Shown piece after piece: positions 15,706 through 18,923 of a DNA stretch of 64,000 nt. Every line of letters begins with the position of its first letter. Position 1 is the first letter of the stretch. The DNA comes from Setoptus koraiensis (taxonomy: Eukaryota > Animalia > Arthropoda). The stretch spans positions 22,568,001 through 22,632,000 of the forward strand of contig CM106585.1 of the NCBI GenBank assembly GCA_048013815.1, read 5' to 3'. Made by a program: the position numbers and the translations under genes. The notes under the pieces were generated by a model that made no database searches, was not told the origin of the DNA, and saw only the letters and a list, made by a program, of their open reading frames with translations.

Positions 15706-17019
15706 ATGAATGGAATAATAAATGTGGGCGATCATGTCGTCTTGAAGAAAACCTATGACGAGGAAAATATGAAAATATTCCGAGTAGAACCAGATAAGCC
15801 AATTTATTATGGTAAATTGAGATTTATTTTCAATAAACTCATTGGAGCTTCTTACGGAACAATATTTGAGATAAAAGATAATGAAATGTTTTTAGTCGAC
15901 AACTTTCAACAGCTGGATTCCGAGTTCACTAGTATAGTAACTAACAGCACATCGACTTTTAATGATAAGTCCCAGTTCTCGCAAGAGAAGATTATCAAGA
16001 AGAAAAAAAGACGCTATCTGAATTTCGTAACAATACTCAGGCCATCTATTCGTCTAATAAGCGATGTATACTTTAGTCGAGACAAAATTGGCGGATTGAG
16101 ATTAGATACTTTGTCCCAGATACTAACCTCTTGCAATGTGCAGAATGGAACAAAATCGCTAATAGTGGACAATAATTTGGGTTTAGTCACTGCCGCTGTG
16201 GTCAGTCGTAGCTGCCCAGATGGTAAATGCATTCAAGTGGCTATGGAATCAGGATTGATAACTAGCTACAGACACGCTGTTGACACATTGGATATCCCCT
16301 CTGAGACATTGAATAATGTTTTATTTTCCATCAACATCAAGGATATTTATAGAATCTCCCAAGGAATTAGCTCGTTTGAGGAAGAGGATGCCAGACGCCA
16401 TCAGCGGACATGCTACAGGTTAGATTACATCAATAAAAAACGCGAGGAGCTCAAGAAGAATTCTTTGGATCACACTAATATCGAGACAACAACAGAAGAA
16501 AGAAAAGAAGATGAGAAATTGGACAAAAGTTCTTACAGTTTCAGACTTGATTTATTGGATGAGACGTTGCTCAAGAAGGAGGCGAATAGAAGTGTTCGCA
16601 AACAAGAAAGAGACAAAGCTTGTGAATATCTCAAGTCTAAATGTCTAGATACACTAATTATAGTCACTCAAAGTTATCATCCACTACCACTATTCAAGTT
16701 GCTATTTCCATTTTTGTTGCCATCCAGACAATTTGCCATTTATAGTGATACCGTTGAGCCCTTAATAGAGTGTCAACATTTCCTCAAGACAGAGTCCTGC
16801 GCAGTTTCCATTTCACTGTCAGAAACCTGGCTTAGGAAGTACCAAGTTTTGCCGGATCGGACGAGACCTGAAATGAACATATCAGGATTCGGAGGTTACT
16901 TATTAAGTGGTACAAAAGCTGTTTTAAATGACGATAGTCGTTCAGAATCAAATATAGAGGCCACCGATGAAGGCGACGATGAGGTCGCAACAAACAATAC
17001 TATTAAAAATTCCGAATGA
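15706..17019 (+). CDS. TRMT6: tRNA m1A58 methyltransferase non-catalytic subunit (TRM6/Gcd10), intronless, 437 aa
   Basis: SQFSQEKIIKKKKRRY, LRLDTLSQILTSCNV, GLVTAAVV and LSETWLRKYQVLPDRTRPEM...GGYLLSG. Confidence 0.9.
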   Translation: MNGIINVGDHVVLKKTYDEENMKIFRVEPDKPIYYGKLRFIFNKLIGASYGTIFEIKDNEMFLVDNFQQLDSEFTSIVTNSTSTFNDKSQFSQEKIIKKKKRRYLNFVTILRPSIRLISDVYFSRDKIGGLRLDTLSQILTSCNVQNGTKSLIVDNNLGLVTAAVVSRSCPDGKCIQVAMESGLITSYRHAVDTLDIPSETLNNVLFSINIKDIYRISQGISSFEEEDARRHQRTCYRLDYINKKREELKKNSLDHTNIETTTEERKEDEKLDKSSYSFRLDLLDETLLKKEANRSVRKQERDKACEYLKSKCLDTLIIVTQSYHPLPLFKLLFPFLLPSRQFAIYSDTVEPLIECQHFLKTESCAVSISLSETWLRKYQVLPDRTRPEMNISGFGGYLLSGTKAVLNDDSRSESNIEATDEGDDEVATNNTIKNSE

Positions 17020-17033
17020 GTCCGTTTTAGCAG

Positions 17034-17683
17034 CTAATCACTATCGTTCTTTTTTGGCTTATCAACATAAAAATTTCTAGTCGCTACTGGTAGTTTAAAT
17101 TCCAGACCATCTAAATCTTTTGTAATCAGAACCTGGCAACTTAACCTCGACGTTGACTTGACGAACAATGCCAAATCAAGCATATCCTCTTCTCCGTCGC
17201 TAGCTGGCGGTAGTTTCTTAAAGCTATTTTCGTCCAAATAAACGTGACAAGTAGAACAAGCCAAGCTACCTTCACAGGCGGCCTCTATTTCAATTCCTGC
17301 CGATTTAGCGGCAGACATTAATGTTTCCCCTACCTTTGCTTCGATTTGTTTACCCTTATGAACAATATTAACTTGAGTTGGTGGGATAACAAGGCGTCTT
17401 TTATCTCGGCTCACGTATGAATTATCACTCAACTTATGTGCTGGCCCATCTGGTCAGTGGGAATACAACAGGCGGTAATCAGTAGTGTGGATATCGAGTT
17501 ATATAAGATTATATTTATATATATGTGAGTTCCGTATGAGCACTTACCTGGTATCAAAGGATGGGGTGGTGATCTAGGTGACATATCTGCCTTATACCTC
17601 AACTGTTTATTCCATACTCTACCAAGAAGAAATTGTCTAAATATTTGCATCATGTAGCTGATATCCCTTCTAGATGAGGCCAT
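17034..17683 (-). CDS. NDUFA7 (complex I B14.5a)-FDX2 ferredoxin fusion; join(17683..17548,17449..17034), 183 aa
   Basis: Exon 1 MASSRRDISYMMQIFRQFLLGR...QLRY...PHPLIP ends at CCAG|GTAAGT. A 98-bp intron ends CTGACCAG|AT. The splice yields LIPDGPAHKLSDNSYVSRDKRRLVIPP (NDUFA7 core), which runs without a stop into a ferredoxin with CEGSLACSTCHV, EEDMLDLA, SRLSCQ and LPVATRNFYVD. The joined length is 552 bp, in frame. Confidence 0.88.
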
Positions 17684-18047
17684 TATGATATATTTAAATA
17701 TTTGACTCGGATCAGGAGAGGTACAGATGATATTTTTAATTACAATCGTACAATAATATACAATATGTAAGCAACTTACGAAGATATTATTATAAATAAA
17801 CATCGGGCAGAAATCATGTGATTTTGTCTTGTGTTCGTTTAGCTAGAAGGACAAAGTACAGGGCGTCTTTTTGCGTCAAAACTAGGTTTAAATTTCCCGC
17901 TGAGAGAGATGCCAATTGGACTAACTCTTCTACTATAAAACACGTGGTAATACCGTTTAATATCGATAACCAACTGAAACTTTGAATAACTAAAAACTTC
18001 CAATCAATCAGGATTCTGGCGTGAAAAACTGCATATTTTGTTCCATC

Positions 18048-18923
18048 ATGAAGTACATTCTCGTAACTGGGGGAGGAGTTGATAAACAAATTATAACCAG
18101 CTCTATAGGATTCCTCTTGAACGCCTGTAACCTCCGGGTCAATGCCATCAAAATAGATACTTATATATGCCTTAACCCCAAATGTGATTCACCGACGCGG
18201 AAAGTTTTCATTACCAAGGACGGTTGCGACGTCGATCAAGACTTGAGAAATTATGAGAGTTTCTTAGATACACGCTTATCTGGGAAAAACCACATAACAA
18301 CTGGTAAAATATACCAAAAAGTTATAAATCAAGAAAGAGAGGGTAAATATCTTGGAAAAACTGTACAGACCGTCAATCATATTACCGATTGCATCCAGGA
18401 CTGGATTAAGGAAGTGGCCACTCTAAAGAACGAGTTCGTCGATTTGAGTGAGACAGATGTTTGTTTAATTGAACTCGGTGGAGCAGTTGATCACGCGTCT
18501 GCTATGGCGTTTACTGAGGCCCTGCGTCAATTTGCAAGCGACCAAAGACGAGAGGACTTCTGTTGCATACATGCAGTATTTGTTCCTCGCACTAAGACTT
18601 CTGGCGAATTCAAGACAAAAGCGTTACAATTCAATGTCCAAGAGTTGCGTAAACTGATTATTTGTCCGAACATGATAGTTTGCAGATCGGAGTACGCTAT
18701 CCCAACAAGTGTCCGTGACAAGATTGCTAGATCTTGTGGTGTAGGCAACAAACAAGTTATAAATTTGCCAGATTCATCTTATAACGTTTCTGTTGAACTA
18801 GAAAAACAAGGCATGATTGAATCGCTAGCTGAATGGTTGAAACTAGACCTTAAAACTAATTCAAAGAAAATTGGAAGGTGGAGCGAGATCAATGAAAGTT
18901 TACAACTGTTGTTATCTAGATAA
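18048..18923 (+). CDS. CTP synthase-like protein, N-terminal synthetase domain only (291 aa), degenerate motifs
   Basis: MKYILVTGG, TTGKIYQKVINQEREGKYLGKTVQTVNHITDCIQDW and IELGG are clearly CTPS. The stop at 18923 falls at the interdomain linker, and LSm2 ends 61 bp away, so there is no glutaminase domain. Confidence 0.85.
   Translation: MKYILVTGGGVDKQIITSSIGFLLNACNLRVNAIKIDTYICLNPKCDSPTRKVFITKDGCDVDQDLRNYESFLDTRLSGKNHITTGKIYQKVINQEREGKYLGKTVQTVNHITDCIQDWIKEVATLKNEFVDLSETDVCLIELGGAVDHASAMAFTEALRQFASDQRREDFCCIHAVFVPRTKTSGEFKTKALQFNVQELRKLIICPNMIVCRSEYAIPTSVRDKIARSCGVGNKQVINLPDSSYNVSVELEKQGMIESLAEWLKLDLKTNSKKIGRWSEINESLQLLLSR

What the first reader, a model, noticed from the sequence alone, without database searches (positions are those of the whole stretch)
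17034..17683. NDUFA7-FDX2 fusion: a complex I accessory subunit carrying an intact [2Fe-2S] ferredoxin
Seen: splicing a canonical 98-bp GT-AG intron (17547-17450) joins two ORF-track fragments into one 183-aa frame. Residues ~1-70 have the NDUFA7/B14.5a signature (RQFLLGR..QLRY...P.IPDGPAHKLS.N.Y..RD.RR.V.PP). With no stop or linker, residues ~71-177 are an adrenodoxin-type ferredoxin retaining all four cluster cysteines (C-EGSLA-C-ST-C...SRLS-C) and the FDX2-type tail LPxATRNFYVD. The ferredoxin has no ATG or presequence of its own, and NDUFA7 has lost its usual C-terminal tail. Known: these are separate genes in human and Drosophila. FDX2 feeds electrons to Fe-S cluster assembly. Plant and ciliate complex I contain a ferredoxin-like bridge subunit, and S. 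pombe Etp1 is a Cox15-ferredoxin fusion cleaved after import. Inference: either (a) a redox-active ferredoxin is tethered to the matrix arm of complex I, possibly coupling NADH oxidation to Fe-S, heme A or CoQ synthesis, or (b) this is a two-in-one precursor in which NDUFA7 acts as import leader and is cleaved, for example near RDKRR. I am not aware of this fusion being described in animals, but I could not search.
Basis: partly seen in the sequence, partly recalled or inferred. Interest (0 to 1): 0.93.

Follow-up and report, generated by a model that had tools for sequence, protein, structure and literature searches.

The report
NDUFA7–ferredoxin fusion gene in mites
In a group of tiny plant-feeding (eriophyoid-type) mites, a small subunit of respiratory complex I and the mitochondrial ferredoxin that supplies electrons for building iron-sulfur clusters are encoded as one protein; the fusion is real and conserved, but whether the ferredoxin stays attached to complex I or is cut off after import is still open.

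Summary
On the minus strand, exon 1 (17683-17548), a 98-nt GT-AG intron (17547-17450) and exon 2 (17449-17037, stop at 17034) give a 183-aa protein. Residues 1-69 match Pfam CI-B14_5a (NDUFA7) positions 1-72. Residues 72-183 are an FDX2-type [2Fe-2S] ferredoxin. The join lies inside exon 2, so it does not depend on the intron call.

About 50 distinct related sequences share the architecture. They include intronless single ORFs in Fragariocoptes setiger genomic DNA and an Aceria tosichella entry. Other mites have separate NDUFA7 and ferredoxin genes. No stand-alone NDUFA7 was found for F. setiger.

The ferredoxin starts 2-3 residues after the NDUFA7 "PP" motif. In published complex I structures this is where NDUFA7's lineage-variable region begins. 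It keeps all four cluster cysteines, the acidic helix F, and the Asn/Phe that contact NFS1. It is far closer to human FDX2 (48% identity) than to plant C1-FDX (27%).

I favour an uncleaved, complex I-anchored ferredoxin (about 0.5) over a cleaved tandem precursor (about 0.33). I found no paper describing the fusion. This scan has noted other mitochondrial gene fusions in the same genome.

The parts
17548..17683 (-). Exon 1: start codon and residues 1-45 plus the first base of codon 46. Encodes the NDUFA7 N-terminal amphipathic helix and the start of the ascending coil.
   Evidence: Pfam CI-B14_5a positions 1-37, 33.9 bits. AF2 predicts a helix at residues 9-20 in orthologue P0004.
17450..17547 (-). 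98-nt GT-AG intron, phase 1, inside codon 46.
   Evidence: The same intron position is read through in relatives P0008, P0123 and P0131. The intron is absent from F. setiger L002, L001 and L008.
17379..17449 (-). Exon 2, NDUFA7 part (residues 46-69): the ascending and lateral coil motif GPAHKLS..RDKRRLVIPP.
   Evidence: Pfam CI-B14_5a positions 39-72, 32.1 bits. The PP motif aligns to residues 65-67 of mammalian NDUFA7 chains and to Drosophila 8b9z_r.
17373..17378 (-). Two-residue junction (T70, Q71) between the NDUFA7 PP motif and ferredoxin strand beta-1.
   Evidence: PP-to-first-Cys spacing is 34 here and 35 in 45 of 46 relatives.
17037..17372 (-). FDX2-type [2Fe-2S] ferredoxin domain (residues 72-183). 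Cluster cysteines C104, C110, C113 and C150; acidic helix F (D130, E133, D134, D137); C-terminal TRNFYVD followed by a short basic/acidic tail.
   Evidence: Pfam Fer2 46.9 bits. Human FDX2 8rmc_I E=4e-30. Foldseek top hits are FDX2 and Etp1fd. Residue mapping.
17034..17036 (-). Stop codon TAG. It lies 14 nt from the stop of the convergent TRMT6/Gcd10p gene (15706-17019, + strand).
   Evidence: The same convergent pair occurs in F. setiger L002.

Best explanation
This is a genuine, lineage-wide gene fusion of eriophyoid-type mites. It replaces separate NDUFA7 and FDX2 genes, at least for NDUFA7. Shown: a single ORF encodes the complex I-binding part of NDUFA7 (amphipathic helix, ascending coil, lateral coil) joined 2-3 residues after the PP motif to a complete FDX2-type ferredoxin. 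That ferredoxin keeps its cluster ligands and its FDXR/NFS1 contact residues. Inferred: the protein is imported through NDUFA7's own uncleaved N-terminal signal. The NDUFA7 part then lies in its usual groove on the peripheral arm. The ferredoxin stays covalently attached and takes the place of NDUFA7's variable region and descending coil, on the surface near NDUFS3/NDUFA5 at the N/Q-module boundary. There, or in a not-yet-assembled free pool, it still serves as the electron donor for Fe-S cluster assembly, with soluble FDXR and the NFS1-ISCU complex docking onto it. My confidence is about 0.97 that the fusion gene is real and conserved. It is about 0.5 that the product stays uncleaved on complex I; the confidence figure given refers to this complete statement.
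For: Gene level: both Pfam domains score above their cut-offs and are contiguous in exon 2. The same architecture occurs in P0001-P0010 and P0019. The gene is an intronless single ORF in F. setiger genomic DNA, in a Logan contig and in an ENA metagenome contig. Microsynteny with TRMT6 is conserved between the window and F. setiger.

Sole copy: a profile search returned stand-alone NDUFA7 for Oppiella, Medioppia, Sarcoptes, Oppia, ticks and insects. For F. setiger it returned only the fusion. Among 325 NDUFA7 cluster representatives, the fusion cluster (P0004) was the only fusion among the 150 listed hits, whose unusually long members I read.

The NDUFA7 part is still under NDUFA7-like constraint. 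Thirty of 74 columns are invariant among four fusions, and the same motif residues are shared with stand-alone NDUFA7.

Structural plausibility: after the lateral coil, NDUFA7 has a variable region. It is disordered in mammals (residues 72-89), a small helical domain in Yarrowia and a short helix in plants (PMC8762328). The fusion's PP motif aligns to mammalian residues 65-67, so the ferredoxin begins where extra domains are tolerated. NDUFA7 is among the last subunits added, and its knockout has only negligible to moderate effects, so a fusion could be tolerated from the outset.

Against cleavage: there is no presequence-like linker. AF2 places beta-1 two residues after PP. The PP-to-Cys spacing is invariant (35 in 45 of 46 sequences, 34 here), while the C-terminal tail ranges from 6 to 44 residues.

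Ferredoxin function is retained: the four Cys, the acidic helix F and the Asn175/Phe176 equivalents are present in all 50 sequences.
Against: A ferredoxin that must alternate between FDXR and the ISC complex is normally a free shuttle, and a 2-3-residue tether to a 1-MDa membrane complex may hinder that. The conserved RRL|V inside the NDUFA7 motif resembles an R-3 type processing site. In eriophyoids the residue after RR is usually L or M, where many other taxa have E. The same genome is reported to hold other mitochondrial fusions, one with a putative internal cleavage site (unchecked notes). I could not test whether a second mitochondrial ferredoxin exists in these genomes. Steric fit on complex I was not modelled.
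Confidence: 0.5

Rival explanations
1. Tandem (two-in-one) mitochondrial precursor. The fusion protein is imported using the NDUFA7 N-terminus and is then cut near the junction, for example after RRL at about residue 65-66. This releases a short NDUFA7 that joins complex I and a free FDX2 that works as usual.
For: Precedent: S. pombe Etp1 is a Cox15-ferredoxin fusion, and its ferredoxin domain (2wlb) is among the top structural matches. The ferredoxin keeps every residue needed for a freely shuttling FDX2. The RRL/V pattern fits an R-3-like processing motif and is enriched in the fusions. Other tandem mitochondrial fusions are noted in this genome, one with a putative cleavage site (unchecked). 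NDUFA7 residues 1-66 would still contain the helix, the ascending coil and most of the lateral coil.
Against: There is no presequence-like spacer between the two parts. The candidate site lies inside a motif that all NDUFA7 proteins share. To my knowledge it is not cut in mammals, where residues beyond it are seen in the structures. Stand-alone Oppiella NDUFA7 also has RRLV. The junction length is invariant, whereas the N-terminal tail of a released protein would be free to vary. At the moment the fusion arose, no dedicated site would have existed.
Confidence: 0.33
2. Leader or anchor capture only. The NDUFA7 segment now serves merely as an uncleaved import signal or membrane-surface tether for FDX2 and no longer functions as a complex I subunit. 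Complex I in these mites would lack NDUFA7 or use an undetected copy.
For: NDUFA7 knockout is well tolerated in human cells. This genome is reported to contain several genes that borrowed N-terminal leaders from other mitochondrial genes (unchecked).
Against: The conserved residues of the segment are the canonical complex I-contact motif over 70 residues, not just a short amphipathic leader. A pure import signal would not preserve GP.H.LS.N.Y..RD.RR.V.PP across deep divergence.
Confidence: 0.1
3. Artefact: an assembly error, a read-through of two adjacent genes, or a mis-called intron creates an apparent fusion.
For: None beyond the lack of read-level data for this genome.
Against: The join lies within one exon. 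Independent assemblies from different sources (NCBI genome, Logan, ENA metagenome, UniRef) give the same protein. About 50 distinct clusters share the junction.
Confidence: 0.02

Closest known systems
NDUFA7 / B14.5a / NUZM accessory subunit of mitochondrial complex I (Pfam PF07347; e.g. Drosophila 8b9z chain r)
   Same: Residues 1-69 match model positions 1-72: the N-terminal amphipathic helix, the ascending and lateral coil motifs, and the same invariant residues as stand-alone arthropod NDUFA7.
   Different: The variable region, the descending coil and the C-terminal PG..W.WD motif are replaced by a 112-residue ferredoxin. No stand-alone copy was seen for F. setiger.
Mitochondrial ferredoxin FDX2 (human FDX2, PDB 8rmc/2y5c; yeast Yah1)
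   Same: 48% identity and TM 0.81-0.87 to human FDX2. It has the four Cys ligands, the acidic helix F that binds FDXR and NFS1, and the Asn175/Phe176 equivalents.
   Different: It has no presequence or start codon of its own. The GH..PH end of the FDX2 C-terminal motif is lost. In most relatives 'VD' after TRNFY is 'AG' (the window keeps VD), and most relatives carry an extra Cys in the cluster loop.
Plant/algal C1-FDX and the ciliate ferredoxin-like subunit of complex I (7aqq_O, 8e73_FD, 7tgh_FX)
   Same: A ferredoxin-fold protein physically associated with complex I (PMC8290278). It is detectable as a structural match.
   Different: Those are separate polypeptides that sit in the NDUFA6-ACP-ND2/gamma-CA bridge. 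Their cluster sites are degenerate: a single metal ion in Arabidopsis, no ligands in Polytomella. Identity is only 22-30%. Here the ferredoxin is covalently fused to NDUFA7, keeps an intact 2Fe-2S site, and is predicted to sit near NDUFS3/NDUFA5. It is an independent origin.
S. pombe Etp1 (Cox15-ferredoxin fusion) and other tandem mitochondrial precursors
   Same: A mitochondrial ferredoxin is encoded at the C-terminus of another mitochondrial protein. Etp1fd is a top structural match.
   Different: The partner is a complex I subunit, not heme a synthase. There is no spacer between the parts, and cleavage has not been shown.

Membership tests
NDUFA7 / CI-B14_5a (PF07347) | Sequence match to the family model above the curated cut-off | tested here: met
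   33.9 bits (exon 1) and 32.1 bits (exon 2) against a cut-off of 25. Drosophila NDUFA7 8b9z_r E=1e-19.
NDUFA7 / CI-B14_5a (PF07347) | N-terminal amphipathic helix followed by a long unstructured coil carrying GP.HKLS.N.Y..RD.RR.V.PP | tested here: met
   In orthologue P0004, AF2 predicts a helix at residues 9-20 and then a low-pLDDT coil to residue 72. The motif is conserved.
NDUFA7 / CI-B14_5a (PF07347) | Variable region plus C-terminal descending coil (model positions 73-95, PG..W.WD end) | tested here: not met
   Absent and replaced by the ferredoxin.
NDUFA7 / CI-B14_5a (PF07347) | Physically a subunit of complex I | not testable with these tools
   Needs complexome profiling or a structure.
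FDX2-type mitochondrial [2Fe-2S] ferredoxin (PF00111, adrenodoxin-like) | Fer2 domain with the four cluster cysteines (C-x5-C-x2-C...C) | tested here: met
   Fer2 46.9 bits. C104, C110, C113 and C150 are present, and all 50 relatives keep the equivalents.
FDX2-type mitochondrial [2Fe-2S] ferredoxin (PF00111, adrenodoxin-like) | Acidic helix F used for FDXR and NFS1 binding | tested here: met
   D/E, E, D, D at the E134/D137/D138/D141 equivalents in 49-50 of 50 sequences.
FDX2-type mitochondrial [2Fe-2S] ferredoxin (PF00111, adrenodoxin-like) | FDX2-specific C-terminal motif TRNFYVDGH.P.PH | tested here: inconclusive
   TRNF(Y) with the critical Asn is kept in all. VD is kept in the window but is AG in most relatives. 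The GH..PH end is lost.
FDX2-type mitochondrial [2Fe-2S] ferredoxin (PF00111, adrenodoxin-like) | Own cleavable N-terminal presequence | tested here: not met
   There is no ATG upstream of the fold. Strand beta-1 starts 2-3 residues after the NDUFA7 PP motif.
Complex I ferredoxin C1-FDX (plants, algae, ciliates) | Separate subunit with a degenerate metal site, located in the NDUFA6-ACP-ND2 bridge | tested here: not met
   The protein is fused rather than separate. The Cys4 site is intact. Identity to 7aqq_O is only 27%, against 48% to FDX2. Location is not testable.
Tandem mitochondrial precursor cleaved after import (Etp1-type) | Internal presequence-like linker with a processing site, and demonstrated cleavage | tested here: inconclusive
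   No linker exists. An R-3-like RRL|V lies inside the conserved NDUFA7 motif. Cleavage cannot be tested here.

The most novel reading that the evidence does not exclude
An intact, redox-competent FDX2 is a covalent, stoichiometric module of an animal complex I, anchored at the N/Q-module boundary through NDUFA7. This would be an independent recruitment of ferredoxin to complex I, separate from the ferredoxin-like subunits of plants/algae and ciliates, and the only one that keeps the 2Fe-2S site. The largest Fe-S client enzyme would then double as a docking platform for the Fe-S assembly machinery (FDXR and NFS1-ISCU). A less likely version is that the ferredoxin senses or exchanges electrons with the complex I chain.
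Probability: 0.4. Interest if true: 0.8.

Novelty: new variant of a known kind. Interest (0 to 1): 0.64.

Why it matters
Ferredoxin-fold subunits on complex I were a surprise when found in plants and ciliates, and their function is still unclear because their metal sites are degenerate. Here an animal lineage has fused a fully equipped Fe-S-biogenesis ferredoxin to a complex I subunit and kept the fusion across deep divergence, from Phytoptidae to Eriophyidae.

If the protein stays intact, it is a natural experiment in two ways. It shows that FDX2 can work while tethered. It also physically links Fe-S cluster synthesis to its largest client enzyme.

If the protein is cleaved, it adds a clean animal example of a tandem mitochondrial precursor. 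Together with the other fusions noted in this genome, it would point to a lineage-wide trend of sharing import signals during genome streamlining.

Either outcome can be tested with a single proteomics experiment. The finding also corrects database annotation, where the protein is filed only as ferredoxin-2 or adrenodoxin-like and NDUFA7 appears to be missing.

Tried and rejected
No transcript or read-level check of this genome was possible.

2. A word-indexed search with residues 1-72 of P0004 returned only three fusions. It was uninformative about stand-alone NDUFA7, so I replaced it with a full HMMER profile search and an alignment-seeded search.

3. Internal translation start at the Met in 'VMPP'. 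Rejected: the Met is not conserved (I in the window, T in P0003, P0006, P0007, P0008 and P0010), and the product would lack any targeting signal.

4. Natural 'P144L' as a peculiarity. All fusions have Leu where the human disease mutation P144L lies. Rejected as unremarkable, because that position is variable (P, V, L, A, F) in other invertebrate FDX2-like proteins.

5. Membership in plant or ciliate C1-FDX. Rejected.

6. Other NDUFA7 fusions. Long NDUFA7 hits (P0170, P0190, P0269) have low-complexity insertions and no ferredoxin.

7. A second ferredoxin or NDUFA7 within the 64-kb window. None was found.

8. The scan's notes for this genome hold no other ferredoxin entry. This is weak evidence only.

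9. Literature. No paper in the searchable library combines NDUFA7 with a ferredoxin fusion, or eriophyoid mites with ferredoxin or complex I. The A. lycopersici genome paper mentions neither ferredoxin nor complex I.

Full report
**What is in the sequence**

On the minus strand an ATG at 17683 opens exon 1, which runs to 17548 (136 nt). A 98-nt intron follows (17547-17450, GTAAGT...CCAG, 63% A+T). Exon 2 runs from 17449 to 17037 and ends at TAG 17036-17034. Splicing gives a 552-nt CDS and a 183-aa protein.

Pfam places exon 1 on CI-B14_5a (NDUFA7) model positions 1-37 (33.9 bits, cut-off 25). Exon 2 matches positions 39-72 (32.1 bits) and is followed directly by Fer2 (46.9 bits, cut-off 21). 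The two NDUFA7 halves abut at the splice site, which supports the intron call.

The second half of the NDUFA7 motif (GPAHKLS..RDKRRLVIPP) and the whole ferredoxin lie in one uninterrupted exon. The fusion therefore does not depend on any splicing prediction.
- The four cysteines are C104, C110, C113 and C150.
- The tail TRNFYVD is present.
- There is no ATG before the ferredoxin fold; the first Met is M90.
- The usual NDUFA7 C-terminus is missing.

**It is a conserved gene, not an accident**

A database search with exon 2 returned proteins with the same two Pfam domains at 64-73% identity. The named ones are Fragariocoptes setiger ("Ferredoxin-2, mitochondrial, partial") and Aceria tosichella ("Adrenodoxin-like protein", UniRef A0A6G1S700). 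Both are eriophyoid mites.

In F. setiger genomic DNA the whole fusion is one intronless 543-nt ORF (L002). The same holds in a Logan contig (L001) and in an ENA metagenome contig (L008). The window's spliced product aligns to these without a gap across the junction.

Several database gene calls either begin at the intron site or read into the intron there (P0001, P0002, P0005, P0007-P0010, P0123, P0131). The intron is therefore shared by some species and lost in others. This fits the massive intron loss with preferential retention of 5' introns reported for Aculops lycopersici (PMC7738191).

Many 115-126-aa hits that start "MPPK..." are prokaryote-style gene calls. They begin at a Met inside the NDUFA7 RRLVMPP motif. 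In all, about 50 distinct 90%-identity clusters carry the junction.

The convergent neighbour TRMT6/Gcd10p is the same in the window and in F. setiger. The window's genome is in two pieces with several hundred 64-kb windows. That fits an eriophyoid-type genome of a few tens of megabases. I infer that the unnamed hits are eriophyoids; this is not shown.

**Taxonomic limits and copy number**

A full HMMER profile of the NDUFA7 part was run against 1.84 billion cluster representatives. It found 325 NDUFA7 clusters. Among the 150 listed hits, the only fusion is the cluster represented by P0004.

The nearest other hits are ordinary 88-113-aa NDUFA7 proteins from a beetle, a mesostigmatid mite and a fungus gnat. 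The unusually long hits carry low-complexity insertions, not ferredoxin, and two of the three (P0190, P0269) end in the PG..W.WD motif that the fusions lack.

An alignment-seeded search listed stand-alone NDUFA7 from other acariform mites (Oppiella nova, Medioppia, Sarcoptes, Oppia nitens), from parasitiform mites and ticks, and from insects. For F. setiger it listed only the fusion. Oppia nitens also has a separate ferredoxin (P0083).

The fusion therefore arose within, or on the stem of, Eriophyoidea. It appears to be the only NDUFA7 gene there. I could not test whether a second mitochondrial ferredoxin exists in these genomes. Only one ferredoxin per named eriophyoid species appeared among the top 120 hits, and this is weak evidence.

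**Anatomy of the junction**

A published structural review (PMC8762328) describes NDUFA7 as follows:
- An N-terminal amphipathic helix sits at the matrix/membrane interface.
- An ascending coil runs on NDUFS8, NDUFA12 and NDUFS2.
- A lateral coil runs along NDUFV1, NDUFS1 and NDUFS2.
- A variable region follows. It is disordered in mammals (residues 72-89), forms a small helical domain in Yarrowia and a short helix in plants, and touches NDUFS3 and NDUFA5.
- A descending coil completes the subunit.

The profile alignment to PDB chains places the fusion's PP motif at mammalian residues 65-67. The AF2 model of orthologue P0004 shows a helix at residues 9-20, a low-confidence coil to residue 72, and a ferredoxin fold with pLDDT above 90 from residue 73. 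That is two residues after PP.

The ferredoxin thus replaces the variable region and the descending coil. It starts at the one place in NDUFA7 where lineage-specific domains already occur. The PP-to-first-Cys spacing is 35 in 45 of 46 sequences and 34 in the window, whereas the C-terminal tail varies from 6 to 44 residues.

**State of the ferredoxin**

The ferredoxin is closest to human FDX2 (E=4e-30 by sequence). By Foldseek it is 48% identical, with TM 0.81-0.87. S. pombe Etp1fd is next. Plant C1-FDX (27%) and the Tetrahymena complex I ferredoxin-like subunit (22%) rank far lower.

I used the human FDX2-ISC complex paper (PMC11618653) as a residue map. All 50 eriophyoid-type sequences keep the four Cys ligands and the critical Asn175/Phe176 equivalents. 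They also keep the acidic helix F residues that bind both FDXR and the NFS1 arginine patch, except for one E134-equivalent substitution in a single sequence.

The end of the FDX2 motif is relaxed. "VD" becomes "AG" in most relatives, although the window keeps VD, and the GH..PH end is lost. This looks like a working electron-transfer ferredoxin. It is unlike plant C1-FDX, in which one Cys is His and a single metal ion is bound, and unlike Polytomella, which has no ligands at all (PMC8290278).

**Mechanism**

Shown: one gene, one ORF, and both halves under purifying selection with their family-typical patterns.

Inferred: import uses NDUFA7's N-terminal signal, which to my knowledge is not cleaved in mammals.

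The fate after import is open. I favour the uncleaved, complex I-anchored form (about 0.5) for four reasons:
- There is no presequence-like spacer.
- The junction length is invariant.
- The attachment point is structurally permissive.
- The first fused protein must have worked uncleaved. NDUFA7 loss is mild in human cells, and NDUFA7 is added late in assembly.

In this reading FDXR and the NFS1-ISCU complex would come to the tethered ferredoxin, or an unassembled pool would serve them.

The main rival (about 0.33) is a tandem precursor cut near RRL|V, an R-3-like pattern. This pattern is more common in the fusions than in other NDUFA7 proteins, but it also occurs in stand-alone Oppiella NDUFA7. 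The scan's earlier notes report several other mitochondrial fusions and leader captures in this same genome, one with a putative internal cleavage site. I have not checked them, and they raise my prior for this rival somewhat.

A pure leader or anchor role for the NDUFA7 part (about 0.1) fits poorly with conservation of the full 70-residue contact motif. An artefact (about 0.02) is effectively excluded by the independent assemblies.

Direct electron exchange with the complex I chain is unsupported. NDUFS3 and NDUFA5 carry no cofactors and lie on the outer surface. No distance could be computed.

**Novelty**

I found no paper describing the fusion. The proteins exist in public databases under ferredoxin names only. 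It is a new variant of known kinds: mitochondrial gene fusions, and ferredoxin-fold proteins on complex I. Its origin is independent and the 2Fe-2S site is intact.

**Limits**

- The rest of the genome could not be searched.
- No multimer modelling was done.

Noticed in passing
window 18021-18923 (+): The neighbouring CTP-synthase-like gene matches only the synthetase half. Residues 1-283 of the 559-aa CTPS in L008 match at 48% identity, and no glutamine amidotransferase domain was found anywhere in the window by tblastn.
   Followed up: partly
L008 1480-3805 versus window 17034-18923: The fusion gene is adjacent to a CTPS gene in both, but the arrangement differs. In L008 the two are convergent, with a full-length CTPS. 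In the window they are divergent, with a half CTPS, and TRMT6 is the convergent partner as in F. setiger L002. This points to a local rearrangement or to CTPS paralogues.
   Followed up: partly
relatives P0001-P0049 (cluster-binding loop; window residues 104-113): 45 of 50 eriophyoid-type sequences have a fifth cysteine inside the cluster loop (C-D-G-N-C-A-C-S-T-C). The window, F. setiger and P0027 keep the usual Leu there. It might alter ligation or redox potential.
   Followed up: no
window 17034-17036 and 17017-17019: The stop codons of the fusion gene (- strand) and of TRMT6/Gcd10p (+ strand) are only 14 nt apart, so the two 3' UTRs must overlap.
   Followed up: no
relatives, C-terminus after TRNFY: The FDX2-defining C-terminal motif (..VDGH.P.PH) is eroded in the fusions. 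'VD' is 'AG' in 28 of 50 sequences, and the GH..PH end is replaced by a K/D/E-rich tail of 6-44 residues. The window alone keeps TRNFYVD.
   Followed up: partly
same genome, other windows (scan notes): Earlier notes list several other mitochondrial gene fusions or leader captures in this genome: COQ3-MRRF, IleRS-MRPL14, ACAD9-mS38, LRPPRC-STOML2, NDUFAF4-NDUFB11 and an NDUFV1/SDHB shared cassette. Together with this case they suggest a lineage-wide tendency that deserves a joint analysis.
   Followed up: no
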